Origin: Takakia lepidozioides
Taxonomy: Eukaryota; Plantae; Bryophyta
NCBI GenBank assembly: GCA_030704615.1
Contig: CM060731.1
Span: 19,654,001 to 19,718,000 of the forward strand
Length of the DNA: 64,000 nt
Direction of reading: 5' to 3'
Shown piece after piece: positions 38,813-64,000 of this stretch. The translations under genes and the position numbers were made by a program. The notes beneath the pieces are model-generated. The model was given only the letters and a program-made list of their open reading frames with translations, was not told where the DNA came from and searched no databases. Position 1 is the first letter of the stretch, and every line of letters starts with the position of its first letter.

Positions 38813-39282
38813 GCACATCAAGGAATTGCGTTGAGACAACGCATATGTCATCTGTTGCCTGGGATGACTCGGGAAAACCAGGGCCCACTTCAAGAGCAAG
38901 GGCCTGCCTTCACATACATGATGAATTGTCTGGGTCTAGTCTTTGACTTTCCAAGCTAATGAGTTGTAGGTGGTGAGTATAACTGGGGGATTTTGAAGTT
39001 TGTACGATGAGACAATGTCAATGTAGATTTATTGGCAGAACTGTGTTGCGCATCAAGGAACTGCGTTGAGACAACGCATATGTCATCTGTGGCCTGGGAT
39101 GATTCGGGAAAACCTGGGCCCACCTCAAGAGCAATGGCCTGCCTTCACATACATGATGAATTGTCTGGGTCTAGTCTCTTACTTTCCAAGCCAACGAGCT
39201 GTAGGTGGTGAGTATAACTGGGGGATTTTGAAGTTTGTACGATTAGACAATGTCAATGTAGATTTATTGGCAAAACTGCGCA
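38813..39282. repeat. Direct tandem duplication of a 235-bp unit
   Basis: CATCAAGGAAYTGCGTTGAGACAACGCATATG occurs at 38816 and 39051. Confidence 0.92.
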
Positions 39283-41019: not shown

Positions 41020-43755
41020 TGTTGGACTGGTATATAGGTCTGGCCGGGTATCAACCTGGGTATTGAATAATCGACCGGGCTGGGGAGATGGTGGGGGGGG
41101 GGGGGGTTGAGTGTGCGAGTGAAGGGGTGGTGGACTAGCAGGGTCATGACTAGGGGTCTGGGTATGCGGGGATGAGTAGGAGGGGGAGGGAGCTGACATG
41201 GCGTAGGGGAGAGTGTCAATGGTATCAGTATCCTCGGCATGAGATGATTTAAGAATTTGTAGAATAGAGGGGGTAGGGGCGGTACGAAAAGCGGGGAGTA
41301 GATCTTGCGGACTGTGGGGAAAAAGAAGACATGGTAGGTCACATTCAAGGGTGCATGAGGCCGATGGGTGGCAAAATAGAGTACGGAGGTGGTTAAGGAA
41401 TCTGCAGGTTTTGGCAGTGGCTCTGGAGTGTTTAAGGGTGAATCCTATGGGGGTCAAGAGGCAGTTGCCGGTTTCTTACAGCACCGAGGTAGACGTAATC
41501 CCCCCCTCCCCCCCGCCATGTTCGCCGACTTTTAGTGCTGATCCTAACAACTCCACCGCCTTCATTCTTGAAGACATTCTCGGGGTCAGAACCCAGACAT
41601 CAACTGACGCGTTTGGCGCTACATGTCTGGAGACGTACTACCTTTGCAAATGGACCGGTTTTTCCTCAGATGACAACACTTGGCAAATTGAGGACGACCT
41701 CTTTGGTTCACATGATGATTGTGACCCCATCCACAACCTCGCCCTCCTTACTGCGTTCCATAAACGTACCAACATTAACTACCTAACACACACTCACCAG
41801 CAACATGTCTCTCAGGCACAACTCACAGATGCCCGCAACATTCCCTACCCGCTCGCCATTCCTCACATTCACGTCAACACTACCGAATGTAACCCTGATA
41901 AAGACATTGCCCACGACTCCCCCTTAATTTGTCAAGGCCCTCGGCAGTAAAAAATCTACGCCCTCAACGGCCGATACATTGGTCTCATCCCCAATGATCG
42001 GCTAGCGTGGCTCTGGCATAAATACTCTACTCCTAACCCAAAGGCATATCAAATATTGCTACCCAGACAGGATTTTTCTACTGAAATCTGCTAGTAATTA
42101 GACCGCTACCTTAAAGACATCCCCTCCAAAAAACCCCGCGTCCAATCCAAACTAATTCAAGCACACACTCACAGTACTATCCCCAAATAACTGTCTAGCC
42201 TTCTAATCTCCTCCTTCCAACTTACTCACTCCTACTACTCTAGCCTACTCATGTGCCCCATGGAACTTACCTCATATGCTAGCCCACACCATAGAGACTG
42301 CAGCTTTGGCGCCACTAGTCTTGCTACCCAGCATAGGTGGTCCGGTCACGGCTTTGCTCACCCCTCTTACTCCCAAATACAAGAAGCCCTCCAATGGGTT
42401 CGTATTGCTGCCCACTCATCCCCCTCTGCCTGTACTATTCTCCTACTCACACAACAACGGCCTCCCGACAACCCCCCACCCACTTCTACAACTCCCCTAT
42501 GGCGTTACCCTTCTAGCCACCTTTGAACCAAACCAGCTACTATATGAACACAACCTCTCATTCCCTAAATACCTCCGATGCTCAGAACCCACCACTACGT
42601 CACTGCTACTTGTCCAACACACCCATCCCACCTGCACGCCCATTACCCTCCCCTCTACCTTACACCACTTACTCGTACATACATGAGGGATGAAAGTCTC
42701 CATTACACCCAACACACATCATCTTCCCTCTACATCTTGCTCCTTACTCACCCTGTTTCCCAGAGTCAACCCAAGCAAGGCCTAGATAAGGGCGCTACCG
42801 CGCCCCTCTCCCGCCCCCTACTGACCCACCGGTCTCACATCTACGTCTGCCGCTCAAATTCTCTCCTTCACACTCCCATTATACAGATGGCTCCCAATCC
42901 GGCTCTAACGCTGGCTACGGTGTTTTTCACACTGCTAATAACGGTGGGGTAGCTCTTAGACTTCCAGGCCCAGCCACTATGTTATGCGTTGAGCTTATGG
43001 CAATCTTTGAAGCACTCTCCCAGCTGTCCTCCTTCTCCCCCCCATACTACATTTTCACAGACAGCCTTACCTCAATATTTCTTCTTCTCAACCACCTCTC
43101 CAGCCCCTCCTGCCACCTTCACCACCCAGACCGGAACCTCGTTGCAGCTATCATTAACCATGCGGCTTCCATTAATCACCCCATACACCTTTTCAAAGTC
43201 CGCTCCCACACTGGTATCACCGGTAACGACAACGCAGACCTCCTCGCCCAGGTAGGGGCCGCCCAACCCCCACTGGATCCCACGGCCGACCCCATCCATA
43301 TTGCTTGAACACTCACCCATTCTCGCTAATTCACCCAGTACCAAGCCCCCCTACTTACCAAACCCATACATAACCTAAAATCCACTCTCACACGCGAAGC
43401 ACACAAACAAGCCTCAACCTCTACCCGCCATACCAAAGCCCATCTCCAAAAATGGACACAATCTACATTCACCACAAATTGTCAAACTACTTTTGGCACA
43501 CCAAGACTGTCACCGACACGCAAATCCGCCAAACACTTAAATTTTGTTACGCCCAATACATGGGACACCAATGCAAGCACACCTTTTGGCCACGCCAATT
43601 CCTATCCCCCAATTGCCCGTTATGCTCACACACACATATAGTACGTGACACCTGGCCCCACCTCCTCAGTCAATGTACTCACCCCGTTATACATGGTCTC
43701 CGTGTCACTCGCCATAACCACGCAGTTTAGCACATCCATAAACTTCTCATGTCCA
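41020..43755 (+). mobile_element. Non-LTR retrotransposon fragment: chromodomain, RNase H, CCHC finger and start of RLE; 41020-41485 appears inverted
   Basis: Chromo-like FILEDILGVR...YYLCKWTGFSSDDNTWQIEDDL. RNase H: YTDGS, VELMAIFEAL, YIFTDSLTSI, KVRSHTGITGNDNADLLA. Then CPLC...HLLSQC and RHNHAV. Many stops and frameshifts. No RT domain in this copy. Confidence 0.85.
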
Positions 43756-44059: not shown

Positions 44060-45700
44060 ATCCACCCCAGTAGGTTATGGACCTGGGTATAATGTTCTTT
44101 CATACCAGTAGGGTATGTATGGTGCGTGCACATCGCGGAGAGTTACGAAGAACGTGCGCTCTTGCTTTTGGGGATAGGAACGTCCTTCCGTCAAACTCCA
44201 CCCCATGAGTAGCTTGGCGGGGCCCGATGGCGGGACACCGTTGGAGATGCTACGAGTAATGGTAGGAAGAACCATACTCCCCAGTGCTTGGGCGTGCAAA
44301 ACGTTGTTGTGGTGTTGTCGAAAATGGTCTAGGAGCTGTCAAATTCCAAAGCTTGTTTAGGTTGATTCAAGGTTATATGTGGGGCATTTGGATTGGTGCA
44401 TAAACTGTGGCTATGGGACCAAATAAGTGATTTAATAATTGTCTTTAATTGTGAGAAGAAAATGTATGGTAGTTGTGGATCGTTGGAATGGTGTATACAA
44501 ACGAGTTTAGCTAATGACGGTTCATGATATTCCATATAGGCCGGTAAGGGCAGGAGGGATTTATATATGACTGTGCGAGGGTCAAATATAGCAAATATGA
44601 GCACACGCGGGGGGTCTGCCAATAGAGGGTGATCACTGTTGACATGGTTGTTGTGTGGAATAAATAAGATGGTAAAAGCTTCATTGGATGCATGCAGGGT
44701 AGCTATGCGTGCTCAATGTATCGTTTCAGTAGCTAGGATTTTGTGGGGTGTACCTGCAGGGATTGGATTTGGAAGAGGACGCAACAATGCCACGCCTGGG
44801 TGCGGTGCGGAGGTTCATGTCAGGCCTCCATGAATGAAGGTGTTATTCGTCTTCTAAGTTGCCTAAAACAATCTTCCGCTTCGTTGTCCGAGTGAGAAGG
44901 TCGCCCTCGAGCCCAAGATTTCTACCATGGAGAGGAGTTCCCTCCACAAAACTTCTTACCGCCTCTGCCATCTTCAGAGGATCAGAAGACCGCGCTACCG
45001 CCCGATGTAATAATTGTTGGCGGTCGGGACCAGAACCCTTTGCACCACCCTTTAGATAAATATGGAAGGCCGATGACTGCAAAATAGCCCTTGTCATGTC
45101 GTCTTTGTTGGCTATTTACAAGTCCACTTTTAAGACACCACTCCCGGTCTGCCAGCTCACATGCACGGACTCAGACACGTGAAGGTGCCGGAGGACTAAG
45201 AGTGCCCACAACTACTGTTCAGATATCTCTAGAGATGTTGGAGGATGACCTTCCACTACAGAATAGAAAGCCGGTTTTAGAGACCGCCGTGTCCACAACA
45301 TGTTGGCACATCGCCCGGACGTCCGACACTTCAAGAGTAAAGTGTTGGGCAGTACGGTCTGACAGTGCAGATGCATGCAAAGAAGAAATCCGTCCACTCC
45401 ACAGTTTGGGTGTTCCTGCTCCAAGATATGTGGGTCACCACCATCCTCCGGCTTTAGGCACACTTGCCATTGATAGGATCTTGCTAAACCTAGGGAACCA
45501 AAACATCGATCAGTTTCGTATAAATTGGAATAGTTTGTCATTTCCAGTAGACATGTGAGAAGACTGGAGTAATATGAATGAGTGAGATGAAGTTTTGTGG
45601 TAAGGGAATCCACGAGGGGTGTGGGAAGTATTGAGTGGGAGTGCGTAAGAGACCCCATTGTATCACCACCTGGTAAATGGGGTTTACGGTTCAAACACAC
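44060..45700 (-). mobile_element. Decayed fragment of the same non-LTR family, interrupted by a ~670-bp insert (about 44797-45463)
   Basis: LHLTHSYYSSLLTCLLEMTNYSNLYETDRCFGSLGLA matches FQLTHSYYSSLLMCPMELTSYASPHHRDCSFGATSLA (about 42215-42325). ARIA...FTIL matches VRIA...CTIL. Confidence 0.78.
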
Positions 45701-46244
45701 TCACAACAGTATACCCACTTCTAAAAGATATAATCATGAGGGGACATAGAATGAATGCCCATGAACAATAAACCAATTCAGACTATGGCTGACCAGCCAC
45801 AATCAGTGTCATTCTAAGTCATGCAGGAGATGGAAAAAGAGCCAGCATGTAATGGAAGCCAAATGTGTCTGGTAAATGCATGACAGGGCTGGAAAACCTG
45901 AGTTTGGATGAGCATATTGCACATATTCTGCTGCTTTGGGCACAGGGCGGGAAAAATGGTGTGTTCCTGTCAAACCGCGAGATACATATCAGATATTCCT
46001 GCCCCCCTGTCATGTATGACAAGAACTTCCTTCAAACGCATACAATGCCAGACATAGCAGAAAATGAGACATGTCCACACGTTCTCCCTCGACTACATAA
46101 GTGGGTCGTAGGAACACAGCCACTTGTGTGTAGAATTGAGAGCTGCTTTGCATATTCGTCGTCATTTTTTGTATTACCTTTCAGACCTCAGACTTGTATG
46201 TGCCTTCAATCTGCCTTGCATTTCTTTCATTCCACTTCCTTACA

Positions 46245-46649
46245 ATGTCGGATGTGTTGCTTGAATCGGCTTCCTCCTGGTTACAAGAGCAGCCTGAATT
46301 CGATGAAGGCACAATGAGGGAGCTCTTGGGTGACCTCAGTGGCATCATGGGGTCCCGCATTCAAGTCTTGGAAGCCTTGGTGGACCGGTCACAACCAACA
46401 GTAGGGGATATAATTCTTAGGGGTCATGAATCCGTCGCAAGAGTGGGATGGTGTGGCTTCTACGACGAGAGCAACACGGTTGCTGCAAAAGAACCTAACA
46501 AGCTGGTCCTCAGGTCCAGATTCTTGTGTGCACCAAACAAGGAGTGGGGACCAGTGGCTTTGGGCTTGGACCCTGCTCAAGAAAACGAATGTTTCCATAT
46601 ACTCATTGTATTCCAGTGGCTAGATGGTGCTTGGGACTCCATAAGATGA
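46245..46649 (+). CDS. Hypothetical 134-aa intronless ORF (element cargo)
   Basis: Open ATG-to-stop frame MSDVLLESASSWLQEQPEFDEG...WLDGAWDSIR with protein-like composition. No recognised domain. Confidence 0.45.
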   Translation: MSDVLLESASSWLQEQPEFDEGTMRELLGDLSGIMGSRIQVLEALVDRSQPTVGDIILRGHESVARVGWCGFYDESNTVAAKEPNKLVLRSRFLCAPNKEWGPVALGLDPAQENECFHILIVFQWLDGAWDSIR

Positions 46650-48163
46650 TTGATGCACTTCCATCCCCCATACAGAGGTTGATTTAGAGGAGAGCTTCAC
46701 CATCAAGACCATGGACAACCGCAGGTGAAATCTGTGTTACTCTAGAGGGCAACACTATGCATGTAATGTTTGCTTCCATTATGCACATGCCCAAAAACAC
46801 CTCTTCTGTGTTTTTGCGAGTGTTGCCTAAGTGGGGGATGAATCACTTTCAGCATTCCATTCACTTTTTTCGGTGGGATGTCCATGTGGATGTGTGGAAG
46901 GAGAGAATGGTGAGAATGGAGACAAATGTGCCTACGTATGATTGGAACTTCAAGGAGGTAGACTGGTTAGAGATTTACTGAATGAGTGGTGCCTGGCCTG
47001 TTCGAGCATGGTACCATTGTCCGTTCCATCTTGGGAGAAGGCCAGTAGGTGGTATTCGTGAGGTACTGCAGGTGATTGCATGTGCCTTCTGTAGGATTCT
47101 TTGTAATCCACTTCTGTCTTTTATAAAATACTCCCTTCCCCTGTTGTCGCACACAATCTCCCTGTTTCAGTTTGCATAGTCTTTGCATTGGGTTTGTTGT
47201 GTTTGTGTACTGTGTTGTATACATGGATCCATGTGCGGACCTGAATTGCTCTGAATGACATATGCCAATACCTGACATTGAGGTGACAGACCTCGTCTTC
47301 TGCAAATCCTGTTGTGCCATCTTCAATTTGTACTTTATCAATCCACAATTATGACAAAGATATAGTTTTACAATTGGCATGGTATGGTATGGTATTTGGA
47401 AACCACTCCTCGTTTGGAAACCAATTAGCAGATGGTATGACATATGAACGATGGTACCAGCCCAAAGCCATGTTCAATTACAAGTTTATGACATTGCAAT
47501 GGTCCCCAAAATGTATCAGGTTTGTTACATACCACAGTGGGCCTGCAACAAAACTTTCATACCAGTCTGCTCCACATTATGGAGGATTGTTGTTTGGGCA
47601 CATACTGGTATACCATGATGACCACAATACCAACTGGTATGAACCCAAATGATGCCAACACCAGCTGATGTGAGGTATTTCCAATGATGTCATTTCGAAG
47701 CCATAAAAATAGTGATTATGAACAGTGTTAACAAATAAACTACACTTGAAGAAGTTAATATACATAACTACAAGTATGTGGTCACATGTGCCCACGCATT
47801 ATTATAGAACTCAAATGGAGAGGAGAGAAAATGGACACCACCTTCCTCTGGTATATGGCCAAGTATTATCCCAAATGATAGGAAGTGCTCTTGTATGCCC
47901 TCCCAGTGCATGTATTACCGCGCCATGGTTTTGAATTCTCAACTGTATTACATGTGATATTGGCGGGAAATGGAGCCCAGGCGGGTTGGGGCCTGAGGTT
48001 TTGCCTTTGTTGCGGTCTTTCACACGTCCTCCTCCTCTTCTTGTGTTTTTCTCTTTCCGCTGTACCAGACGTCCTCCTCCTCGTCCCCTTGTAGCCTTGG
48101 TTGCACATCTGTGTTGCAGACGTTCTGTATGTCGTGTTGTGTTTTCGTGCTGTGTTTTTGTCA

Positions 48164-48806
48164 ATGGACTATCCTCCCTCTCATTGCTATATGGCTTACA
48201 CCTCCGCCGCCACCGCTTCGCAGTTGAAGGTGTGTGTACAAGATGCCCGAGACATATCCGAATCTCTCCCGCATTCTTCCACATGTACACACACTCTTGT
48301 TTCTAGCATTGTTTTTGGTGCGGGGATGCTGAAGCACGTCTTGCTTGAGGGCGTAATGTATAAGGCCAATGCCCCGAAAACATATGGGCTGCAGTATGTA
48401 ACAATGGGCATCCCTGTAGGCATTTGGGATGTACTTGCCATGGCAGCGGAAGATAACAATTACCGTCTGGACAACACAGTGAAGGCTCGCAAATCTGGGG
48501 ACCATGTGTGAATGGAGGTGAATATTCGGAGTGGAGGAGAACATCTTCTGGATGGTGGAGGCTGATGTGTCCGGGGCGCTGGCAAAGATTGCAGTGTTGG
48601 ATCTGAGGAAGTGCCTATAAACTACAAGGAGCAACATCATCGTGAAGGGCAAATTCACAATGCGGTTCAAGAAATACATTGTTTCAAAAGGCCCAGACAG
48701 TGTACCTTGGTCACTGGGCACCACCGCAACTGAGGCTTTCTTTATGGACAAAACCAATATTGTGGAATATTGTGATGTCGATGAGGTAGCAGGGAAGTTC
48801 TTCTGA
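48164..48806 (+). pseudogene. Decayed ~210-aa orphan ORF (element cargo)
   Basis: MDYPPSH...YGLQYVTMGIPVGIWD...GDHV*MEVNI, frameshift at about 48525, then FGVEENIFWMVE...CL*TTRSNIIVKGKFTMRFKK...WSLGTTATEAFFMD...GKFF*. The stops at 48509 and 48618 are consistent with TGG>TGA and CAA>TAA. Confidence 0.5.
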
Positions 48807-49268
48807 AGTTGTGGATTGACAGGGCCTGTCCTCCATTTACCCACACTCATATGTCTTTGCTCATGCTTCTAGTGAGCATTTCATGTGGACAATAGCTTCA
48901 GCCCCTGACAATGTGTATTCAAATACCCACTGCTGCAGTGAATGTCTTCGTACAATGCAGGGATGTCCTTATTTTTGTTGATGTCTGAAATACAACAAGT
49001 GCGTGGACGATTTGTGTATGTTGCACCGTGTTAAGTCCATTGTACATAATGGCTTGTGACGATTTACGAATGTGAACAGACTCAAACATAAAAGGACACA
49101 TTGCAACCTTCCTGTCATACATGGTGACTCAGCATATCCCTGTGCATGATGGGGCTTCAGATTACTTGGGGTGCATGTGTGCCATTTGGGGTAGGCTGGC
49201 AGTGGGCGTCCCTCATAGTGATGCGTACTCTTATCCCTCGCTCATTCATACAGTGAACCCCTTATTGC

Positions 49269-49714
49269 ATGGCACTTGAACATGATGGAGACGAGGAATT
49301 TAATCCTTGGGATTACGTGAATGAAAGGCAATGTGCATTGGAAATGGGGGTTGGAGAGACATGTGTCTTGGAATACGTTCCACAAAGCCTCGAGTGGTAT
49401 GGTCCAGAGACACTTGCACGTCGGGTGTACATGCATAGGCGGTGGGCTGGTTTTTTCGAGAAGAACGATGTTGCATGGGAATTCATCATAAGACCCCATG
49501 CACGCTGCCCTGTATGCATGTATCACTACGGAAATCCTAATGGCAGTCATTGGGGACCTTACGTGCAACATATCGCAAGTATTGGAGGGTGGAGCACAAA
49601 ACTTTGGCATGCATTATATTTAATATCCTAACAGAAGATGACATTCGAGCGGTCTATCCGTTTTTACCATCAATGGACTATGCATATGAGTACGACTGGA
49701 TTGTCAATGGATAG
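49269..49714 (+). pseudogene. Orphan ORF of at least 120 aa, probably frameshifted near 49625 (element cargo)
   Basis: MALEHDGDEEFNPWDY...RCPVCMYHY...HW..., with a plausible continuation LTEDDIRAVYPFLPSMDYAYEYDW in another frame. Confidence 0.42.
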
Positions 49715-50129
49715 TTCTTATATGCATGTTTACAGGGTGCACACAATGTGAACTACAGTGAGTCAAAAGACAATGCAGGAAAACAATGTTGTGTTGTTTG
49801 CTTCAGTAAAGAACCACATGAAGCATTTTTGAGCACAAGCACATCATTGTAGACATGTGAGGATAGTGTGTACAATGAAATTAAGCATTGCAATGACAGT
49901 GCAAAACATTCATTTCATTTTGCTGCGACAACTATACCGAGTTCTGGTTCTAGGCTGCGAAAGGTGGGTAGCACGGACAGGAGGTTGCACAGGGTGTTCA
50001 GGAAACCTGACATGTGGTGGTCGTGCGTATGGGAGGCCATGTCCTTCTGCACCCTCCAATTCTGCCATAACCAAGTTGCGAATGTTCCCTCTCTTTGCCA
50101 AAGCAGTCTCAACGGGGAACCATTGGAGG

Positions 50130-52570
50130 TTCAGCTGCAAACAAGTTCCCACACTGAGAAATTGCACCGCAAAAATGGATGTAGGGGAAGCACGTCGAAA
50201 GAAATAGCCATGAGCACTTCAGCAAGCAAAACATCCATATTACGGTATTGGAAAAGTGTGCTTACCGGGCCTGCGCCACTTGGTTTTGGATTCAGAAATG
50301 TTTCCTCCAAGTACACATCAATGTAATGAGCAGTAAACATGCCACATTCCCAGTTGGAGACTTGTTGGGGCACAAGGGGGGTCACCCACCGCTTTGGGTG
50401 TGTGACCTCTGTCCATTTTGGGTTTGGAGGGTACAATCCTAGCAGTACAGCCCACACTCTTGCAAACAGAGGGCTTCAACATCTTGTGTTTATGCGTGCT
50501 TTTAATGAAGGTACCGCTCGTGTTCCAAAGTAACAACACTCTAGTGGTCGCTACACAAAACATTCACACCTTCAGCTTAGTCTTCATCAGGATGTGCATG
50601 AAAAGGAACCCATACGCACGCAAGTGATAGGAACAGAGGCAGGTTAAATTGAGAAAACTCACTTAAATGTAACAGGGACAACGAGCACTTTGACACCAAC
50701 ACAGTCAAGGGTAGGGAACCTTGTGTCCACCCAAGCCTGTATGGAGCTCACTCCGTTTCCGAATTTCTTGCAATGGTCGTGAAGGGAAATCTAGGCAAAG
50801 CTGTCTAGCACACGAATTTTACTGCACACATAATTTGGAAGGGAAATTTTTTTGCAACACACCCAAAAGTCCATGACACACTTGTCCAGCCCCTTTTATC
50901 TACCAGATCATCTGCATCTTCTAGTCTAAGAGGGATCTGAGGGGACAACGAATATTGGAAGAACCAGACGTCTGTCTTCTTGCTCACCACTACACCACAG
51001 CAAATCCTGAACAGACCCCACAGAGCATGTCAAGTGGCTGCATGGACAATGTAAGCACACATTGTAGTTTCAAACATGATTGAAGGTATACCATAAGATT
51101 TACGATAAAGAAGGGTGCACGAGCATTGAACTCACATCATGTTTTCCATCGCCTCATGAATTCTGCGCATCCACGAACACATCGCATTATCATAATAGCA
51201 CAATCTGCATAACAGTATCACTGTATGGGCCAAAAAAACATGTGCATGTGCAACGAATGCAAATGCTTACCTAGACAATGTTTTTTTTCGGAGGGCTGCA
51301 ACTACTTGTTTATCGGTGGATGGAACTTTACATAGCGGAGGAAGGTCTGCACTGGCAGGTGGAGTGGTATGGGTGGCAATGGGATTGGCAAAGGCAATAG
51401 AGCGAGAGCATTTAGGTCCTTTGTGCACACTCCCATGCACATCACCATTAGATCGTGTCGTGGCGTATGTGTTGTGAGGAGTATTGAGACCATCAAACAT
51501 CATCTTGAAACGACAAAGGGGGGAAGGCAAGGCCATAATCTGCCAATGCTGCATATCATACTGTTCAAGCAGTTCACCATTAGGGGTTCTCCAAGATCCA
51601 ACTTTGGTTACTGCAGGTTGCATCCTCATCAGTAGGATATCGGACACTAATGGGGGGAGGACTCACAAAGGTATGTGCTGAAGTGAAAGACTCCAAAGGG
51701 GGGGGCGGTCCAGCAAAGTCAGGGAATACTTGACTGCAAGACAAGTCCATTTCAAGTTGAGTCAGGGGACTTGTTTCCGGACAAAGAAGGTCGGCATAGA
51801 CTTCTGAAAAATGCACATTATGTTCGGGGAGGTGGTGGAGAAGTCATGATGCTTCATCATCAGGTGTGCATTCAATCGCTTTCCCATTGTTGGTTGTGGA
51901 TGCAAGGTCATCAGTATTCCCCTCTGAGGGCATGCCTGCTGGAACAAAGAGGACCAGTTTCCGCCGCCTGCTGCACCTCATTTTCTCCATTTTGTGACTG
52001 AGGCATGGTTTTGGTGGCAAGCTCCACAACATTGTACAATGTTGCAATATTTGCATTCGCGGGGATGGCTGCAAGGTGTGCGGTCGTCTGTGTGATGGGT
52101 GATGAATGCAGTTGCTGGATGACACCCCACTTCCCAACGTCACCAGCCGCTTTTGCAAAATGCGCTTCAGCCACCCCCTGCCTAGCTCTGATGAGAGCAT
52201 CTGCACTGTGTTCCACACTTTTCAAAGCCTGCAACACGGGGGATTCACCATAGTTGAAGCTGCCTGCACACATCCAAAGCAGAACTTGCACATGAGGCCG
52301 GGTTAAGGATGGATTCAGCACTCGACAACATGGTGGACAATATTATTTGCGAAATCAATGAAATCTTGCAGCGTGGACATTCAAAGCATTGTAATGGCAT
52401 ACCTGGTGGGCAAGGAAGCCACCCCATATCCAAGTCCTCGCGATACCTCAACATTTCAGTAAATTCAAGGATGGCTTTATCAACCTCCATTCCTGGTTGT
52501 CCCCCTCCAAGTCTGTCCTCAAGGTCTGCCACAGAGTCCAGGGTAGTTGCAACGAAGAGTGGACCAAAAA
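50130..52570 (-). pseudogene. Ulp1/peptidase C48 (SUMO protease) family gene, spliced and decayed
   Basis: IRVLDSF...VLVVPVTF|NDH*SVVTL gives the catalytic His at 50544-50546, with the following Trp changed to TAG. VPQQVSNWECGMF carries the oxyanion Gln and catalytic Cys (about 50345). The long upstream region has frameshifts. Confidence 0.75.
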
Positions 52571-53395
52571 ATTGAAGATGTGGCCTACATAAAAGTACAT
52601 AAGATAAAAAAACAAAAATCGTGAAAAAAAACCAAAACATGGATTCACTTGCACTATATCATGTGGAACGTCTATTGTTGGGATATTGTCATTTCAAATG
52701 GGAAAAAGAGAGATGTTATGGAGGATATATGCCGTCACGTGTCATCGGTGACGTAATCCAAACTTGACCATAATCACAACAGTACATGTTTTTGAAAATT
52801 TGACCTTGGCCCACCCTTCATCTATAATAAATGGTTGTATTTAATGAAGACAGTTCATGGGGTATTTTGGTTTTCATATTGTAAACTTTAAAGGACTTTA
52901 TGAAAATGGTTGTTATTGGTAGGTTGATAAAGTACATAAAATTTAGTTTAATGAGTAAAAATGTTAAAAAACTCTCACACTAGATTCTTTATCATAATAG
53001 CAAGGGAGGGCCAAGTCCCTTATTCCAATTATGTTACAAAATCTAACATATAATGAGTCCATAACAAGTTTTGTATGGAATGTAACAAAAGCTTATGGAC
53101 TTTTCATAAAGTCCATCACTTCTAGAGATAACGGTTTTTGGCGGCAAGTCTGAGAAAGTAGATACTACATGTAGATAGGTACAATGTTGTGAGTCTCTTT
53201 TAATAAATTTCATAGAAATATAAGATTGTAGATCAAAACCAACAAACTATGTACAGGAAAAATGACGCAGTTACGTCAAAAAATGGACACTGTAGGCTGC
53301 AATCACCCTCCAGCACCTCTGTTGTAGCTTGCTCATATGGTGCCATGCAACCATACAGAAAGTATCCAATGTCAAAGAAATTATTGGCTGCATTT

Positions 53396-55191
53396 CTAAT
53401 GGCCACGTGACCCTCGGTTGTGTCCAGAAGTTGGTGGAGGAGGTCGCGCAACAAAGAGTTCCTTAGTGTGGACAAGGGAGTGGTCTTCTGGACGTGACAT
53501 ATCCAAATGAGACGCAACACCCGCATGAACTGTGGTGTTTTCGGAGGTGGTGCTGTGTTTCGACTTCCTGCCAAAATGCGCCATGAACAAGTGGGCTTCC
53601 TCCCGTGAATGTGTGAACATATTATTAGAGAGCTCTGGGATGTCACCCGCCTTGATAATTTGGAAAAGAGGGGACCAGCCCCATTTACTCTCATATATTT
53701 CGTCATTGACCTGTCTGTCCTATTGAAGCCAACCTCCACAAATTGAGTTTTTCTACTCTCCAACGCAGCCTGAGCAGCAACCTCCTTCAGCTCACAGTCC
53801 ATGATGGCAGCCCTGTACTTGTGATATTTGACAACATCATTGCACTCAGCTTATTGAGCTGCATGGTTAGGAGTAAAACCAGGACGTATTGAAAAGCACG
53901 CCAATGTCTTACGAAGAAGTGCCTCCTCCTGCAGTGGTGCATCATGCTGCTACCACACCATGACAGAGAATTGTACTGACAATAGAACAGACCCCGAAAT
54001 GGTCATGGATACAAAAACAATCCAAACAAAGACATTGCAATGCATGAGAACAAAACCCATGCAAAACAATGTTTTCAAATTCAAATGCATATAAGAGAAC
54101 ATGGTGCTGCAGATCCTGAGTTGTAAATGAGAATATGCACACCTGCCAATGCATGGTGAAGAAAATGCCACGAGCTTCAGCTACAGGTAATACTTGTGCC
54201 TCCAAGAGGAACAACCTTACAATAAAGATGCTAGAATACAAATTTGCATGAGAACATGACCATTCCATATACTTAAATGCGTGCTCACAGATGGACAAAT
54301 AAACATAGAGAGAAGAGGGCGGTCAGTGCAGGAGAGGCTTAGAAGAGGTATTACCATGCGTCGGACGAACCATTGACCATAGGCTTTACCCATCATACTA
54401 TTAGCAAATTCCGCGCTCCCCACAAGTGCGGCAAGACTTTCTAAAAAACAGGGATCATCAGGTGAAGGGAACCCATCATGCAACAAATTGTAGTCCATGA
54501 GGTAGCTGAGACATGGGCGTGCAACAGCTGCTGGTTTGGGGGCACGACAATGTCAAATTTCAGTATCAGAGAAGCTGCCACAAAGGCTTGTTTGGCCTCT
54601 TCTCTAGTCGTGGATTGAAGCAAAGCTGACTTGATCAATTGATCCAGAGTTGGTGCCATTGTATGTGTCCTCTTTGGTGGGTCTGGGAGCATGATAGTTT
54701 CCTCGTCCATTGCCAAGTCCCCTGCCTGAAGAGGTACATGGGAGTCCTTAGGTAGCCGCAAATGCCTCCTCCGCTTCATTTCTGGCTGAAATTCGTCTTC
54801 ACCCCCACTATCCTCCCGGCCCACCTTCGCCCACAAGTTTTTGCGCGGCAGATGCCCATGGTCCTTCAGAACAGTCTCCATCAATGCCCTCTGACCAGCT
54901 TCAAACACATGGTACATTTTGAGTTTAGCCCCACCCTTCCCAATAGCAGCACACCCATTTATCCTGTGAACGTTTAATTTTTTTTTTGTCTTTATATACC
55001 AGTTTACAATAGATACATATGAAAGGCTTCCTGTTATTATCCCCGGGTTCATGAACCCTTGCCCTCATGTAAGCCTCGCAAATCAGTGCTTCCCACTCAT
55101 CAGTATCGTATTCCTCATGGATCCGACGCGCTTTAAGCATGGTGGATTTTTTCACCATTTCGGAAGTACAGGTGGACAGTGTACACCACAC
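53396..55191 (-). pseudogene. Spliced, frameshifted gene with a C2HC zinc finger
   Basis: KPFICIYCKLVYKDKKK/LNVHRINGC (C-x2-C-x12-H-x4-C) is restored by correcting a slip in the A-run at about 54980. Downstream exons remain protein-like. Confidence 0.6.
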
Positions 55192-55846
55192 CTAACCTAA
55201 AGAAGCGGACGTTCATGTTAAGGCACAAACTGAGAGTGGGAAAGGGTACTAACATGGGCCCTCACAACGAAGTATAAGCCATTTCCATTCTGGACGCCAC
55301 CATCTCGCACAACCGAAAGAAGCCATGCATTTGGCACACAAAGAATAATGCATTGAAGGGAAGAGCAAGACATTGGCATCACAATGCCAATGCGAACACA
55401 ATGCGACGAGCAAAAAAAATCCATCAAACTCACATTAATCTCTGAACCCCTGCAGCTATAAGTCCTAGTTGAATATTCGTGTCTCCATGAGTGTATATTC
55501 AGATTTTTATTACTGTATGCAAAATTCTTAGATTATGAATAGAGGGTTCTTGAAAATGAGGCAAGTTGGTCATCATTGTCTCATATGTGGGGCAGACAAA
55601 GATTGTTGGAGATAAAAGGCGGCCTCATGAGCCTCACGTTGTGCACTTCCCAATGAAACCCAACAATTTCACAACCCTCCAGAGATCGTACAACCCAGGC
55701 CTTGCCCCCAAGTAGTATGGTTTGATGTTTAGGGTGTATGGTTCAATATGGACAATGGATATGATGATGACATTTATTTAACAGAAATCCTCAAAGTACG
55801 TGACATAAAATAATTATCTTTGAATGTGATTGTCCCACTTATTCAG

Positions 55847-57539
55847 TTAATCACAATTACATACAAGAGCTTGTGTAATTAAAAGTTGGAGAGCTTCCCT
55901 ACTTAACACGGTATTACCAATGAGGTCCAATTGATCAAAATATCTATGTTCATGCGTTGCCAAACCACAATACCGAGACATGTAGTAGTGGAGATGAAAA
56001 CAAGAGATCGAATCCTTCCCAACCTTTCCAATTTCATAAGCTTGTGCACGGACACGAACCATGTCAGGAATGAGTTCAGCTCCTTTGGTAGGAAGGTCAT
56101 GCAAACCACCTGCACATCGCCACCTTTGATTCCCACGAGGCCCCAAGTCTTGGTTACCAATGTGTCGGGGGTCTTTCCTGAATCGTGGGTCATCAATGAG
56201 GTGGCTGGTCCATCTACATGATCAAACACATCACCACATTAGAATAACATTCCAATGTAAATTGTAGCTTAACAATGAAAGTACAAACAAGAGAAAACCA
56301 TGAGCTTACCCATGCAAACATTCATACTCGCGAAAGAAACGAGCAGGAACATGTGATCGACGATATCGACCGTTTTCATTAATCGTGCGAACTCGATGTC
56401 CATTCCAAATCTTCACGTATTCATCAACAGCTTCTTGTAGTATGGGCATATATACGTCAATAAAAGATTCTCGTTGCCACGGATCGTCCATATCCAATAA
56501 TCCATCATTGACCATTGCTTGGAAGCAATTTTTGTAGTAGAACATTACCTTCTCCCATAGATGCCGCCAAAAGTGTTCAATCCTCTAACGTGGTGATTAC
56601 ACCACACAAAGTATTAGGAATATGCACAACATTACACACTCAATGATTAATAAAGATGAACCAAGAAATATGACAGAAACGTAAAGTTGATATGCAAGAT
56701 AGAATTGTATAGAACACTAACCTGATTGTGTGTAGAAGACCCAATCAAGTACGGATTGGGTGTTTCATCACGTATGGCTTCAATGTGTTGTTTTATAAGA
56801 GAGTGCTCTACTGCAAAATCAGATCGAATTCGTAAAGGTGCTCCAAACTTGGAAACTGCATCGTGATATCATTTGAAAATGGTTTTTTCTTTCTTGTTTC
56901 TTGCAACGTTCGCCCATAAAACAAAATGAGAGGCCCCATCAATGCCAGCATGTACTCGAAGACAAATCATAATCAATTTGTCATAAGCTGCACCACGAAT
57001 TGCATACATGTTTTAGTTTGCCTACAATTTTGTGCGATATATAATACAAGAAAACGTCTTGCATGTGCATCTTCAAAGAACATTAAGATGCATGAGATAA
57101 AATACTTACAGTCAATGTGCCATAGAGCCATAGGCATTGTCACATTATACTGAGTCCTCCGAATTGCCTGTGCCCTTCTCCTACGCTCATAATGGTAGGG
57201 TGAGATGATTTTCAAAGCTTCCCCCACCTTCCTTCGAGGAATCCGCCAATTTGACCTCCTTAAGGCAGATTGCACTGTTCTCATTCCCCAATTTGACCCA
57301 TCCTCTTCAATAGGAAGTAACTCTTGAATATTTTCACACAAGCGTTGGACACTCAATTCATGATGAACTTTGAAAGGAGACCCTTGGACTTCTGATAGCA
57401 ATCTTCTCAATGGTCGTACATCATCAAAAGAAAGGGCAGTGGCGATTGATTTCATTGTGGCACCCTCATTCAACATTGCTTCCACATAAAGTACTAAATC
57501 ATCCACTACTTTGTCACCATCCAAATGGTTGTTTTCCAT
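55847..57539 (-). pseudogene. DDE transposase/integrase core (IS3/IS481-like, IS3EU type), 4 exons: 57539-57110, 56987-56722, 56584-56310, 56213-55847; one internal stop at 56869-56871
   Basis: Spliced translation: WGMRTVQSALR...RRTQYNVTMPMALWHIDSYDKL...VHAGIDGASH...FGAPLRIRSDFAVE...GSSTHNQRIEHFWR...WNGHRVRT. The D-D-E triad is intact and all three introns are GT-AG and in phase. Confidence 0.88.
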
Positions 57540-58959
57540 GCTCACATGATCTGTCTTATCTCTGCTTAATAGCCCCAGTGCCAATGCCTTCGACCTTGCC
57601 CTTGTTGTAATTGTTTGCTGTTAATTCTGTAGTCACTGCATCCACTCACACACTCCCCATAGGACTCACGTCACTAAAGTTCACATAGGCTATCAAGTAG
57701 ATGAACCAAATGTACTTTGAAACAACAACTACTCTATCCTAAAATGTATTAGCAAACCACAGTACACAGTGTGGGCAGGTTGAAGACAAACCATGTGATC
57801 AAGCTCTTTCTTTCAGTGTGTGTGTTGAGGAGTGTTTGGTAACCCACTCTACTACCCCTAAAGTTCTCTCCTCAAAACTCATGAGTCACCTGCACGTACA
57901 CAAGAACTACAGCTTTAGCTAATCGCAATTCAATTGAATTGGCATCTGATCAAGTGAATTGCGCTGCATTTCACATCAAGGCCTTTTTGGAATTCCCTAC
58001 ACGTAATACATGAAACGGTTTTACATCAACTATCAACTGTATTACCACCACGCATGCATCCATATGTGAAGGTTGTCATATATGCATGCATCGTCTCACA
58101 TGTATGCATGTCTGCTCATATATGCATTGTTCATAATACAGATTAGGACGTGATCGTGCTTTGCGGAAGTGATTGTGAGGTGCTTACACAGACGCTGAAG
58201 GCGACGCTTCGTATGCGAGGGAACATCTCTCAACAACCACGTCGCATCAAGCGTGCCACCGTCTCTATCGGTGCCGTATTGCCTGGTCTGGAAACATCAT
58301 GTGTAGATGAGTGAACGTTGTGGCAAGTTGAGTGAAAGATATGCCCCGGAGGAAAGCGCTTTCGAAGGAGTTCTCAGCAGCGTCAGTCTTTCCTGTTTCA
58401 TGGTAGTCATTTGCTTTGGTTACACACCCTTCGCCCACTTTTTTCATGTAAGTAGCGCTTGGATCCTGTGCAACACGATTCGGAAGGAAGTGTACGTATA
58501 CCAAAACGCTTTCCTTTTCATTTGTTTTGTTGCGCTACTGCTCTTCTCATGCTCGGGAGCTTCTGTTGATCGCCTATATCATTCCCGTGTTGCAGGTGAA
58601 GCTACAAGGCCTGCTAACTCCCTTGTCTCTTATATGCCATGTACCTTGAGTTTAAAATCTGATAACTTGTGTTCTGTTGATTGGAGTCATGGTTTCTCCA
58701 ACTGCTGTATACCTTCCATAGCCACCGAGAGGTCTATCTCTCCAGGTTCTGGAACACTCCTGTAGCCTGTACAACCACAAAGTAGAATTTTTTTGCTTCC
58801 ATGTACATTTATTTTTCTCACATAAGTGGTCAACAACCTTACACTTGGCATGATGATGATAGGTATGACAGGTATGATGATGAATGGTATCACTTGGCAT
58901 GATAGGTTAGGAGTCTACTTTGAGATGCCCAAGTCAAGTTTCAACCTCTACTGAATGGA

Positions 58960-59805
58960 CGCCCTTTGCGCAGGTGTAGCAGTATAGCGCTTGATTACAA
59001 CGGAACTTAGTTAGTTTTGGTAAATTAGTCTATATGCAGGTAGAGGTATCGTCATTGGGTACTAGCCCTGTTTGGTATACTCACAGAGGTACAGCGCTTG
59101 ATTCCAAAGAAACTTAGTCAAAACTACACCATCTGTAGGTAAGGGTATCGTTATGAGGTAGTTTCCCTGTTTGGTATACTCACAGAGGTACAGCGCTTGA
59201 TTCCAAAGAAACTTAGTCAAAACTACACTATATGTAGGTAAGGGTATCGTTATGAGATAGTTTCCCTGTTTGGTATACCTACAGAGGTATAGCGTTTGAT
59301 TTACAAATAAATTTGATGTCAAAAACAGTGTATATTTATGGGCAGAGGTAGTAGCCCTGATTAGTATACCGACAGAGGTATAACACTTCATTGACAAAGA
59401 AACTTAGTTATATATACTAGTACAGGTATCATCATTAGGTTGTAGCCCTGTTTGATATATCTGCAGAGGTATAGTATTTCATTTTACAAGAAAAGTTGGC
59501 CAAATTAATCTATATTTATGCGGAGGTATCGTCATGAGACAGTAGCCCTGTTTAGTATACCACCAGAGGTATAGCGCCTGACTTACAAAGAAACTTGGTC
59601 AAATCAGCCTATATGCAGGTTGACGTATCGTTATGAGGTAGTTCCCCTGTTTAGTATACCTACAGAGGTATAACGCATGATAGCCAAAGAAACTCAAGAT
59701 AAATCAGGCTGTAGGTATCGTTAAGAGGTAATAGTCATGTTTGGTTTACCTACAGAGATATACTGTCTGGAAGACAAAGAAACCTAAGATAATTCAGTCT
59801 ATATG
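58960..59805. repeat. Minisatellite, about 9 copies of a 91-100-bp unit
   Basis: CCCTGTTTRGTATA...CAGAGGTA recurs at 59066, 59165, 59264, 59355, 59446, 59546, 59645 and about 59736. Confidence 0.92.
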
Positions 59806-60570
59806 CCCCTGGTCGCAGCTGAAAAAATGACTTCCCGCACAACAAAAGCTCAGACATATCTGCATAAGACCATAGGAGTGCCCAAATTAGTGAACACATG
59901 TTACCTTACCCACTTTCTTATTGCCAATTGTGTAATGCTGCGGATGTTTCTAAACCTTAAAATGACATTGGATAAACCCTAAAACATGTGTGAGATTTCA
60001 CTAGCTTTCAAGGACAACAACAGGGCATGACCAATTCATCAAAGAAGACAATCTTGAACTGTGATACTTCTCATGGGGTGATATTTACAATGTAATAATG
60101 TCTTGAAGCTTTATATAAATCATACGGCAGGTGGGCCTCTCTCCCACCCTCTCCCCCAAGACTAAAACATATTAGAGCACTTCATACAGCGCATAAGAAT
60201 GTCAAACTAGCTAATAAACATTTTATAGTAGAGTACTCAACTTACCATATTAAATATGCAGTATAGCAACATTCCATTAATGGGTGCAAGAAGATAGGGG
60301 ACCGCAGCTATACCTCACTGTCAAAATCCTCATCCATTGATGACGTCTGTGCAAAAGTCACCAACAGCTGGAAATGTAACAACCGACAACAAAAATGGAT
60401 TCCCGTCCTTGGGCCACAACCAGATGGCACTACTCAGCGAACTTGTAACACTTAACATTCAACCAAATGTCACACTCACAGTACCACTCCAAGAGCATTT
60501 CAATTATCTATGATACCACAAAATCAACCCCTCTGTTTGAGCCATGATTCATACCCTTCACCTCCACATG

Positions 60571-63500
60571 TCATGCACAACCATAACTACTATCCATGGT
60601 AGAATAGTTAATCTTCGTCATCATCATTGAGGCATCTTTGTATGGGGGAAGATATAGAACTTGAAAGCAAGTGCTTGCTTGAATGCATGGATAGTCATGT
60701 CGATTGAGAAGTTGTATATTGATGTCTTTGCTGCCAAAGTACTCCAATCCAGTGATAAAAATAGCCAATCGAGACCTCTCAGCATAGGTCATTTGATCCA
60801 CACAATCTCGAAACCATTTTTGTTGGAGGGGCAATATAGATACATCAAATATGCACTTCCTCAAGAAATCACTTGCTTCAATTGCACAGGCACCATTGAA
60901 TACAACACGCATTGTATCAAGAGATATGCCTTTCAAACTGTCTTTCATTCGATCTTTTATGGTGGGTGCACATGGTGCTTGTTCCACAGCCATGTAAAAC
61001 CCCTCTTGCATTGCCTTCACAATCAAATGCGTCCATTGAAAAGATGACTCCAAACAATGGCTCCAATCTTGTGCTCAACTTCAGATTCCCAATTTTCTTC
61101 TGTCAGATTGAAATCCGAGAATGTCCAAGCCAAGTCTTCATGTGTTTCATCCTCTTGGAGTCTTCGAATCAATTTCATTGCCTCATCTCTTGATTTTCTA
61201 AGGCAATTTAAGATTGACCATTTTGCGGCCCAGCCCAATCGAAAATCACGTTCTAAATCCTTTTTCATTTTGGGCTCCACACCAACGGACATGTTTTTGG
61301 ACTCGGGGACTTGGTCACAAAACATGACCAAAGTTGCGAATGAAAAAGGTCTTGAGACTTCCAATTCGTTCGATGCGAGCATGAAGATCAAATGCCCTAG
61401 CATTTTGGCCTGCAATATGCACAAACAAATAGTAAGAATCAACAATGATACCTAACATTCAAACACAAGAAATGACTGTCATGGGAGTATCTTTAAAAAT
61501 AATTCATGCATGTCAATCTAAAACAAATGACTTTGCAATCCAAATCTCACCGCATCCAATTGAATGTCTGTGCGTATGACCTCAGAATCCAATTTTGGAT
61601 GCAACAACTTTCCTTGAAGATTATCAGGATATTCAAATATGGAATTGTAGCTCTGAAAACCAACAACAAAATCATCAGTCTTTGCTAGTACAATTCAAGT
61701 TTGTCATAAAATGCAAAAAGCACAAAAAACATTCATAAGTATGCAAAATGTGCATCAAAGCAAAAGATTACAAATAATCTTAAGACATGAAAAAAGTTTG
61801 TGTTTACTGCTTACGAAAGAGGTAGACCAAAATTGCTTCCAAGTATTTGTAAGCCATGCATCACGCAAACCATCTTCATCGATAGTCAATCTTTCAGCAA
61901 TGCCGCTGCAATGAATAAATTCAACCTTTGGTCTATAGCAAGCTCTTTCATGTTTGATCTCATTCCATTCAAGGTTGAAAGCTTGAAGCTCCTTCGTTTG
62001 GGTCACCTTGAAAAACAACACGGAAATTTCAACAACTTCGAAATGTCTAATTCTAAGTGAAAGCAAGCTTACAAAATTAAATACGATCATGACAGTGCAT
62101 GAACTCACCGGAATCTTGGTAATAGTGATGTTGGAAAAGCCCAACCATTTTTGTACGGCTTGAAAACAATTTGACTCATATAATACCGTTGGTATTTCAA
62201 TATGGCTTCATCAACCTTCTCTCTTGATTGCAAAAGTGTCGCCTCATCTTGGTGAGTCTCAATTTTGTCTGAGCAACACATAAGCTCAAGGTGGGCCCTT
62301 GAAAATTTGGTAAAAGCACATAACTTCAATGTCTCATGGATTCTTTGACTGAAGGTGTGATCTTCATCACCTAGAGAACCTCCATTGATGCTGTAGTGTT
62401 GTAGAATCTCTTCTGCTGTTGGGATACATAGACCAACATTCAAGGACTTAGAGATAGCTAGATCCCATGCATCCCAATATTTCCAAAAAGGTCGCGCCAT
62501 GAGCTCAAACTGAATTCGAATATCGCCAGGATTATACATGCTCATGGAAGGGTGCATAGTAACCCTACTGAGATTATCCTCAGATGTAGTGGAACCCCTA
62601 CGAAGCTCTTTTCTTTTAAAAAGCTCGTTACCAATACGTCTCAACACTTCATCATTGAAAGAATCTGTATGGAGCTCAACTTTAAACATGTCAAAAGCTG
62701 ACCAAAAAACTTGGGATCCCTGTTCATCCTTGTGGACATCGAGTGCTTCATATGCAGATTTAACATCACGTTCCCTCAATGCCTCGAAGTATGCCTCTTG
62801 ATGTTTGATCCATGTCTCTGCCATCTTGTTCAGAACTTCATCTTCAGCTGCCCATGTACAATGAGTGGGTGTTGAGGAGATTATGTCCATCTCATTAACA
62901 ATCATACTAGATGAGGAGGACATACCAACATGCGTTGTTGTGATTGGAGATGCAGGTAATGCCAGATTATAGTGACCTTGGACATTCCCCCGTTGCACGT
63001 TCCTACATCCACCTCGAGGCGGCTCACTCATAAAATCTGAATCAGAATCTCCAAGGCTGCTAGTCGGAATATTGCCACTTGATTGTTCCATCAATCCAAA
63101 CGAAGACACATCATTGTTTAATCTCGTGATGTGCAGGGTCGTAGAAGGCCTTACCCCATTTGAACCTCTGACACGCTTCGGTACTTGTGACGTACTATCA
63201 GCTTCAATGTGAGATGTTGTCATACCATAAGGCCTTTCGACCCTTCGAACATCTTGGGGCACTTGGGTGACATGAACATCTTGAACTTGTGATGGGGCCA
63301 TATGAAAAGGTTCACCATCGTTTGATGAGGATAGAGATTGAGAATCTTCAATCTCCATAGGCCTGATCTGTGCACTACCACATCGCCATCCATGGGCATT
63401 GGACCTTCTTTCATTGTCAACCTCCCTACACCTTCTATCCCTCTTCTTAGGTGGATTTCTTAGGAATTGTTGATAAGCAACAATTCCATCACTTGGGACT

Positions 63501-64000
63501 GTGCTTACATCAGGAACATATGAAACCTCGCTGCTATCAGGGATGTAAACAATAAATGTTGTTGCTGGCAATCGGCCCCATAGAGCCCCACGTTTTCGAA
63601 TCAATGGCTCGAGAAAATATTTGCCTGTTGCTCTCCTGGTCCGTTTGAAAAACACCCTGTCACACGTGGTATAGGTGTTTGACGATGAGGCTCAAGTTGT
63701 GCAAAGTGGGCAGCAATCTGAAACTCCATTGTTCCAAGATAGAATGGCTCGGGATAGATTTGCCCACCCCACTGAAGGTTTGCTTTGAGAGAGACCAAAA
63801 CAACTGGGTTGTCTGGAACCCAGTTGGAAATCAATGGCGTTAAAGCCTCACGATAGGTTGACCACTCTATTGACCTTGGAAGCATATGATGCGCCGTTGA
63901 ATATCTTTGGGAGGCACATTAGAAGATGCTTGAGGCTGTCTTGTTCGTTGTGTTCTCGACTCGCAAATGTTTCGAGGAACAGAAACATTCAAGTCATTGA
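60571..64000 (-). pseudogene. HECT-domain E3 ubiquitin ligase with a long novel N-terminus; spliced (exons to 62109, about 62052-61815, 61652-61551, 61409-60571); frameshifts near 63660 and 61030
   Basis: HECT motifs in order: VEF...TIDEDGLRDAW, SIFE, AKMLGHLI, KAMQEGF, VFNGACAIEASDF, KWFRDCVDQM...RLAIFITG, ASTCFQVLYLPPY (catalytic Cys) and terminal YGCA*. Confidence 0.85.

What the first reader, a model, noticed from the sequence alone, without database searches (positions are those of the whole stretch)
45784..64000. Candidate giant IS3EU-like DNA transposon carrying a ubiquitin/SUMO toolkit in a plant genome
Seen: more than 18 kb contains a spliced IS3/IS481-type DDE transposase, a complete HECT domain, a Ulp1 protease, a C2HC zinc-finger gene, at least four orphan ORFs and an internal minisatellite. 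The recognisable genes all carry similar lesions, unlike the intact host genes to the left. Known: Ulp1 is carried by MULE/KAONASHI, CACTA and Zisupton elements, and IS3EU transposons are described mainly from animals and fungi (from memory). Inference: this is one large mobile unit whose ubiquitin ligase and deSUMOylase could counter host silencing or control transposase turnover. I do not know of such an element being described in land plants.
Basis: partly seen in the sequence, partly recalled or inferred. Interest (0 to 1): 0.9.

Follow-up and report, generated by a model that had tools for sequence, protein, structure and literature searches.

The report
Moss transposon carrying a ubiquitin ligase
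This is a decayed moss DNA transposon of the known GingerRoot/IS3EU group, and its relatives turn out to carry their own HECT-type ubiquitin ligase gene, a cargo I found no description of, while the neighbouring SUMO-protease and orphan genes could not be shown to belong to the same element.

Summary
The genes are there. The window has a four-exon DDE transposase (Pfam rva_4, one stop), a spliced HECT E3 gene (two frameshifts, catalytic Cys kept), a broken Ulp1-type gene, a C2HC-finger gene, orphan frames and a 99-bp minisatellite. The host is a moss. The transposase is GingerRoot, already described from lycophytes and mosses (PMC6839031) and the same lineage as IS3EU (PMC10045372), so 'not known in land plants' is wrong.

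The HECT cargo is real and appears undescribed. Three related elements in two families, bounded by TA..TA ends and perfect 6-bp target duplications (10.2, 8.7 and 7.1 kb), hold the transposase plus the same HECT gene. HECT remains lie near 8 of 13 related loci, and HECT and transposase divergence co-vary (Spearman 0.85, Mantel p 0.025).

The 18-kb single unit is unproven. The window has no TIR or TSD, TATGG at 45784 is chance-level, no relative has Ulp1 or the orphans, gene order differs, and the 45.8-55.2 kb block has a different base composition. Likely role of the ligase: countering host silencing or turning over the transposase (inferred).

The parts
55847..57539 (-). GingerRoot/IS3EU DDE transposase, 4 exons (57539-57110, 56987-56722, 56584-56310, 56213-55847), one premature TGA at 56871
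   Evidence: Pfam rva_4; splice sites; 57-63% identity of exon 3 to transposases in L001-L005, L009, L013; about 46% identity by eye to the GingerRoot DDE stretch printed in PMC6839031
60571..63918 (-). HECT E3 ubiquitin ligase gene, 5 exons, 5' end unresolved at the window edge; frameshifts near 63650 and 61030; catalytic Cys kept; conserved N-terminal and middle regions of unknown fold
   Evidence: PF00632 E 1.6e-10; colinear homology of all exons to the HECT gene of complete elements L003 and L013; splice sites
59031..59797 (.). Minisatellite, about 8 units of 90-100 bp, upstream of the transposase
   Evidence: unrelated tandem repeats also lie upstream of the transposase in L004, L007 and L013
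58120..58900 (-). Decayed orphan reading frame, 7 stops
   Evidence: stop density below shuffles, p 0.04; no Pfam hit
53233..55160 (-). Decayed gene or genes with a C2HC zinc-finger pattern near 55.0 kb (across a frameshift); membership in the element not shown
   Evidence: frame 53233-53952 has few stops, p 0.0015; no significant Pfam hit, no homologue in related loci
49910..52584 (-). Broken multi-exon Ulp1/C48 (SUMO-protease-like) gene; His and Cys motifs kept; membership in the element not shown
   Evidence: Pfam C48 E 0.08; SENP2 and SENP1 among the best PDB hits, E 0.13-0.7; splice sites; C48 motif absent from the related loci scanned, L001-L013
49269..49631 (+). Orphan ORF, 120 aa, with a Cys-x2-Cys...His...His pattern; membership not shown
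   Evidence: no hits
48164..48880 (+). Decayed orphan frame; membership not shown
   Evidence: p 0.02 for low stop density
46245..47700 (+). Decayed orphan gene with a Cys/His-rich middle part; membership not shown
   Evidence: no hits
45784..45788 (+).
   Evidence: 40 TAYGG sites on this strand in 44-64 kb, no partner and no TSD

Best explanation
The right part of the block (about 55.8-64 kb) is a decayed copy of a bryophyte GingerRoot/IS3EU transposon of a subtype that encodes two proteins: an integrase-like DDE transposase and a divergent HECT E3 ubiquitin ligase. Shown in relatives: the pair sits between terminal inverted repeats with TA..TA ends and moves as a unit, leaving 6-bp target duplications. 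Shown: the ligase has evolved under protein-level constraint and diverged together with the transposase. Inferred: it is an accessory, trans-acting enzyme that takes ubiquitin from a host E2 onto its Cys and passes it to a substrate picked by its conserved N-terminal region. My ranking of substrates: a host silencing or chromatin factor (about 45%), the transposase or the post-integration complex (about 30%), other or none (25%). This copy is dead. The Ulp1-plus-orphan block to the left is either an added module of this family or a separate decayed element; I put single-unit status at about 45%.
For: L003:7678-17879 has TAGGG..CCCTA ends, a 422-nt TIR at 91%, TSD GGTGGC, transposase then HECT. 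L005:8415-15513 has TSD CCTGTG and keeps the HECT C-half. L013:7293-15961 is a second family, TATGG..CCCTA, TSD CAGGAG. HECT gene or remnant within 10 kb of the transposase in L001, L002, L003, L005, L007, L009, L011, L013. Pairwise identity of transposase and HECT across five families: Spearman 0.85, Mantel p 3/120. Window versus L013 HECT: 45-55% amino-acid identity with four-fold sites at 16-33%, i.e. saturated, as in the transposase. Catalytic Cys present in every copy that retains the C-lobe. Precedent for accessory enzymes in this lineage: TET/JBP and alpha-kinase in rust IS3EU (PMC12730594); anti-silencing VANC/KIU in MULEs (PMC13317346).
Against: In the window HECT lies upstream of the transposase, the reverse of L002, L003, L011 and L013; order does vary, being convergent in L007. 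No ends were found, so even the HECT-transposase link in this copy is inferred. Several relatives lack HECT within 10 kb (L004 Ceratodon, L008, L010, L012 Calypogeia), so it is dispensable or often lost. No activity, expression or substrate data. Structure predictions failed (pLDDT 37-44).
Confidence: 0.72

Rival explanations
1. The whole 45.8 to >64 kb block is one giant (>18 kb) GingerRoot element carrying HECT, Ulp1, a C2HC gene and orphans, with its other end beyond the window.
For: No second transposase domain and no host-type gene in the block (Pfam); no internal TIR pair, while positive controls were detected; all genes decayed; an unrelated retroelement remnant bounds the block at about 45.7 kb; L011 also has extra orphan ORFs around its HECT; TATGG is a real end type in L013 and medaka.
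Against: No homologue of any left-block gene in related loci with up to 10 kb flanks. CHG o/e 0.93 versus 0.58 and GC 0.449 versus 0.407 between the left block and transposase+HECT, permutation p <0.0002 and 0.0014. Complete relatives are 7-10 kb; published GingerRoot are 3.9-12.9 kb.
Confidence: 0.45
2. Two or more related elements lie in tandem or nested: the HECT is the tail of one element whose transposase is beyond 64000, and the minisatellite marks the left end of a second element.
For: The usual order is transposase then HECT then right TIR (L002, L003, L011, L013). Tandem repeats lie near the left end, upstream of the transposase, in L004, L007 and L013. L005 shows exactly this juxtaposition, a foreign HECT 2.7 kb upstream of another element.
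Against: No inverted-repeat signal in 59.8-60.6 kb, against itself or any other intergenic segment. HECT and transposase share low GC and strong CHG depletion and both are about equally close to L013 (62% each).
Confidence: 0.25
3. The HECT is a passively captured host gene fragment, as known for GingerRoot and Pack-MULEs, with no role for the element.
For: 29% of Selaginella GingerRoots carry host fragments (PMC6839031); some relatives lack HECT.
Against: Published captures are 84-1654 bp fragments at 79-98% identity to host genes. Here a whole multi-exon gene is shared by at least five families at 32-69% protein identity with saturated silent sites and is only distantly like solved HECTs (best E 1e-5). 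A search with the window's C-terminal piece found no host-type HECT (insensitive and length-limited).
Confidence: 0.07
4. The block is a run of ordinary host genes or pseudogenes.
For: The left block has CHG o/e nearer to host genes (0.93-1.0 versus 1.15).
Against: Transposase and HECT have homologues only in mobile, TSD-flanked contexts with different neighbours. Synteny could not be tested. Tenable only for the Ulp1/orphan block.
Confidence: 0.05

Closest known systems
GingerRoot (Cerbin et al. 2019, PMC6839031)
   Same: Transposase core (about 53 of 115 positions identical by eye to Sl-GR-005, sharing RSDxAVEH, GSSTHNQ and IExFWRHL); lycophyte and bryophyte hosts; TA..TA ends and 6-bp TSD in the relatives found here.
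   Different: Published elements are 3.9-12.9 kb with 100-150 bp TIRs and carry at most recent host fragments; no conserved second enzyme is reported. The elements here carry a full conserved HECT gene, with TIRs up to 400-800 bp.
IS3EU (Repbase; PMC10045372, PMC12730594, PMC8232023)
   Same: One lineage with GingerRoot (99% bootstrap in PMC10045372); TAYGG-type ends; 6-bp TSD; described as encoding two proteins; accessory enzymes known in fungi (TET/JBP, alpha-kinase).
   Different: No HECT cargo in the papers I could search. A medaka element fetched here (L014:8429-19694, TATGG..CCATA, no TSD found) has a convergent spliced gene with HECT-like motifs by eye, but this was not statistically confirmed, so the cargo may be older than plants and may be noted in Repbase records I cannot read.
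KAONASHI/VANDAL MULEs with Ulp1 (PMC13317346); Zisupton and Dada with Ulp1 (from memory)
   Same: Transposon-borne C48 protease; in VANDALs linked to anti-silencing VANC proteins.
   Different: Different transposase superfamilies; no MULE or Zisupton transposase was found in the block; membership of this Ulp1 in the GingerRoot element is unproven.
Plant HECT subfamilies I-VI (PMC3712016) and the divergent G2E3/GL families (PMC3673628)
   Same: C-terminal HECT domain with catalytic Cys.
   Different: No ARM, IQ, UBA or ubiquitin domain detected; unknown N-terminal region; neither survey mentions transposons. No HECT tree with host genes could be built.

Membership tests
GingerRoot/IS3EU | Integrase-like DDE transposase of this lineage | tested here: met
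   PF24764 on three pieces; D, D and E present; groups with bryophyte transposases apart from animal/fungal ones, support 92/95 on one exon; about 46% identity by eye to published GingerRoot
GingerRoot/IS3EU | No HHCC motif upstream of the core | tested here: met
   exon 1 translation contains no HHCC arrangement (read by eye)
GingerRoot/IS3EU | TIRs with TA..TA ends, in this copy | tested here: inconclusive
   no pair in the window; one end may lie beyond 64000
GingerRoot/IS3EU | TIRs with TA..TA ends and 6-bp TSD, in relatives with the same transposase and HECT | tested here: met
   L003, L005, L013
GingerRoot/IS3EU | 6-bp TSD or empty site for this copy | not testable with these tools
   needs sequence beyond the window and other host copies
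HECT E3 ligase | C-terminal HECT domain | tested here: met
   PF00632 above cut-off for the window piece and P0151; PDB hits are HECT ligases
HECT E3 ligase | N-lobe present | tested here: inconclusive
   motif seen and conserved, but single exons give no Pfam or PDB hit
HECT E3 ligase | Catalytic Cys near the C-terminus | tested here: met
   S/N-T-C-F in all copies aligned; aligns with the HECTD3 Cys motif
HECT E3 ligase | Ubiquitin thioester formation | not testable with these tools
   bench assay
Ulp1/C48 protease | His-Asp-Cys triad and oxyanion Gln | tested here: inconclusive
   His, Gln and Cys motifs in order; Asp region hit by a frameshift; E-values 0.08-0.7
Single >18-kb element | Shared ends and repeated gene order in other copies | tested here: inconclusive
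   no host copies reachable; no relative carries the left block

The most novel reading that the evidence does not exclude
GingerRoot/IS3EU transposons have carried their own HECT E3 ligase since before plants and animals split (medaka element with a HECT-like second gene), and this moss family added a SUMO protease and several more genes to form one >18-kb mobile unit that rewrites both ubiquitin and SUMO marks to escape silencing.
Probability: 0.22. Interest if true: 0.85.

Novelty: new variant of a known kind. Interest (0 to 1): 0.62.

Why it matters
Transposon-encoded counter-silencing enzymes are few (VANC/KIU, TET/JBP). A HECT ligase kept under selection as the second gene of a DNA transposon would be a new kind of such cargo, and it gives a testable handle: its substrate should be either a host silencing factor or the transposase. 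It also means some divergent 'HECT genes' annotated in bryophytes, and possibly fish, are transposon genes, which matters for HECT family surveys that report near-constant plant gene numbers. The complete L003, L005 and L013 elements make the claim checkable now.

Tried and rejected
TIR and TSD searches in the window: nothing. Homologue search with the 516-aa HECT exon: blank (length-limited, says nothing on full-length kin). Five scans of viral contigs with the transposase, HECT, Ulp1 and orphans: nothing, so no support for a viral origin. Rfam: nothing. AlphaFold on the HECT gene's N-terminal region and on the medaka C-terminal piece: unusable, so no fold search was run. A first medaka 'TSD' GAATTC was an artefact of a palindrome inside a longer TIR; the true ends are 8429-19694 without a TSD. 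The medaka gene as HECT: Pfam none, hhalign E 0.009 for the N-lobe motif but probability 4% and nothing for the C-lobe, TOM1 hit E 0.96, moss HMMs none; kept as a lead only. HECT presence on the transposase tree is not clustered beyond chance (few rows). Literature searches pairing HECT or ubiquitin with transposon, IS3EU, Ulp1 or G2E3 gave nothing relevant; Kojima 2019 and Repbase were not available. The published GingerRoot stretch has no reference here, so it was compared by eye and left out of alignments and the tree. No contig taken for human was met.
Full report
Host and setting. The window is eukaryotic, with intron-containing PEPCK (8.2-11.9 kb) and PGK (30.8-33.4 kb) genes recognised from their translations, an AP2 gene, a Ty3 remnant and a non-LTR-like remnant ending near 45.7 kb. 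The named strong hits of the AP2 frame are Sphagnum and Ceratodon proteins, E down to 1e-42, with angiosperms at 1e-6 or worse; no hit exceeds about 70% identity and the best cover a third to two thirds of the query. The host is therefore a moss, with no close relative in the database (inference).

Checking the observation. The transposase has four exons on the minus strand with GT-AG introns that keep the frame, and one internal TGA at 56871. Three pieces match Pfam rva_4 and the D, D and E residues are intact. The HECT gene has five exons from at least 63918 to 60571. Its last piece matches PF00632 at E 1.6e-10 and keeps the catalytic Cys. Two frameshifts break it; the natural protein P0151 runs in one frame across the second. 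The Ulp1 gene rests on motifs and weak scores: Pfam C48 E 0.08, SENP2/SENP1 at E 0.13-0.7. It has several stops and frameshifts. The C2HC pattern, four stop-poor orphan frames and the 99-bp minisatellite are present. The proposed terminus is not supported: TAYGG occurs 40 times on that strand in 20 kb, and no inverted partner or target duplication exists, although the same test detects the diverged TIRs of L004 and L013.

What the transposase is. Its best relatives are in Ceratodon purpureus, Calypogeia fissa and plant contigs of metagenome assemblies, with fish, mollusc and fungal proteins further away. It matches the DDE stretch printed for GingerRoot from Selaginella lepidophylla at about 53 of 115 positions, counted by eye (PMC6839031). 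That paper reports GingerRoot in lycophytes and mosses, with 6-bp TSDs and TA..TA ends, and PMC10045372 joins it with IS3EU at 99% bootstrap. So the lineage is known in land plants.

The HECT is transposon cargo. In ENA assembly ERZ25073694 (plant contigs with PsaD and RPL4 neighbours, species unknown), L003:7678-17879 has TAGGG..CCCTA ends, a 422-nt TIR, the duplication GGTGGC on both sides, the transposase, and a gene colinear with the window's HECT gene from its N-terminal region to the stop. L005:8415-15513 is a deleted member of that family with TSD CCTGTG. L013:7293-15961 is a second family, 64-77% identical in DNA where it aligns, with ends TATGG..CCCTA and TSD CAGGAG. L007, from a JGI metagenome, has the two genes convergent; L011 has a more distant HECT; L001, L002 and L009 have the gene or remnants. 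That is 8 of 13 plant-type loci. L004 (Ceratodon), L008, L010 and L012 (Calypogeia) show none, and L006 is too short. Across five families, transposase identity and HECT identity co-vary (Spearman 0.85, exact Mantel p 0.025, short pieces). Four-fold sites are saturated while protein identity stays at 45-63% among the three closest families. This is unlike the recent host fragments described for GingerRoot. A medaka element with TATGG..CCATA ends has a convergent gene with HECT-like motifs by my reading, but no test reached significance.

Is the 18 kb one unit? Not shown. For: no second transposase, no host-type gene and no internal TIR pair in the block. Against: no gene between 45.8 and 55.2 kb or at 58-59 kb has a homologue in any related locus. 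The left block also has higher GC (0.449 versus 0.407) and far less CHG depletion (0.93 versus 0.58) than transposase plus HECT, permutation p 0.0014 and <0.0002; this points to a different history, though codon use could contribute. The HECT-first order is also not that of the complete relatives, which leaves room for two adjacent elements, as seen in L005. I put a single unit at about 45%.

Mechanism. Shown in relatives: mobility as a TIR-bounded unit with a 6-bp staggered insertion. From established knowledge: HECT ligases take ubiquitin from an E2 onto their Cys and use N-terminal regions to choose substrates. Inferred: the ligase is accessory, since some relatives lack it, yet useful, since it is conserved. 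Fungal IS3EU carry TET/JBP and alpha-kinase genes (PMC12730594), and MULE KIU/VANC proteins with Ulp1 domains counter methylation (PMC13317346). I therefore favour removal of a host silencing factor (45%) over transposase turnover or disassembly of the integration complex (30%). This copy is inactive.

Novelty. Six literature searches found no report of a HECT ligase in a transposon. HECT surveys and reviews of giant or gene-capturing transposons do not mention it. Repbase and subscription papers were not searchable, so prior notice there cannot be excluded. Verdict: a new variant of a known superfamily, interest 0.62.

Limits. The published GingerRoot sequence has no reference here and was compared by eye only. 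Blank protein searches are length-limited and say nothing on full-length kin.

Noticed in passing
window 41243-43727 (+), with a related minus-strand piece at about 44330-45700: Non-LTR-like remnant with a chromodomain (PF00385, E 2.5e-7), then RNase H (PF00075, E 6e-13), then a CCHC knuckle and an RHN motif typical of restriction-like-endonuclease retrotransposons (motif reading from memory). A chromodomain in such an element is unusual; no reverse transcriptase was located.
   Followed up: partly
L014:8429-19694 and L015 (Oryzias latipes): 11.3-kb IS3EU element with TATGG..CCATA ends and a convergent multi-exon gene with G2E3-like HECT motifs by eye; not confirmed by profile searches; no TSD found.
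   Followed up: partly
L011:11449-18840: Distant GingerRoot family with a divergent HECT gene plus further orphan ORFs (for example a Cys-rich 294-aa frame at 16920-17801); ends not found. Possibly another large multi-gene variant.
   Followed up: partly
L005:4286-5709: A second, more divergent HECT gene (35-42% identity) upstream of the complete element, suggesting insertion of one GingerRoot into or next to another.
   Followed up: partly
L007:6108-6462 and 19376-19602: Inverted 21-bp subterminal repeat arrays 13 kb apart around a transposase and a convergent HECT; ends and TSD not found within the fetched DNA.
   Followed up: partly
L003:11045-12088 (also L001, L005): About 1-kb element with long inverted repeats between transposase and HECT; related sequence also lies at L011:4872-5675, so probably a nested MITE-like insertion.
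   Followed up: no
window 23699-24344: 287-nt inverted repeat at 97% with a 72-nt spacer, just right of the Ty3 remnant at 20374-23500; probably a young fold-back or MITE.
   Followed up: no
window 12690-13338, 13892-14094, 16013-16890, 30468-30668, 38809-39278: Other tandem arrays (237, 42, 52, 40 and 235 bp units); the 52-bp array lies between 26-nt inverted repeats at 16013 and 16890.
   Followed up: no
window 45784-45801 and 57926-57941: Small palindromes: a 6-bp stem at the proposed left end and a 16-bp perfect palindrome upstream of the transposase; both could be chance.
   Followed up: no
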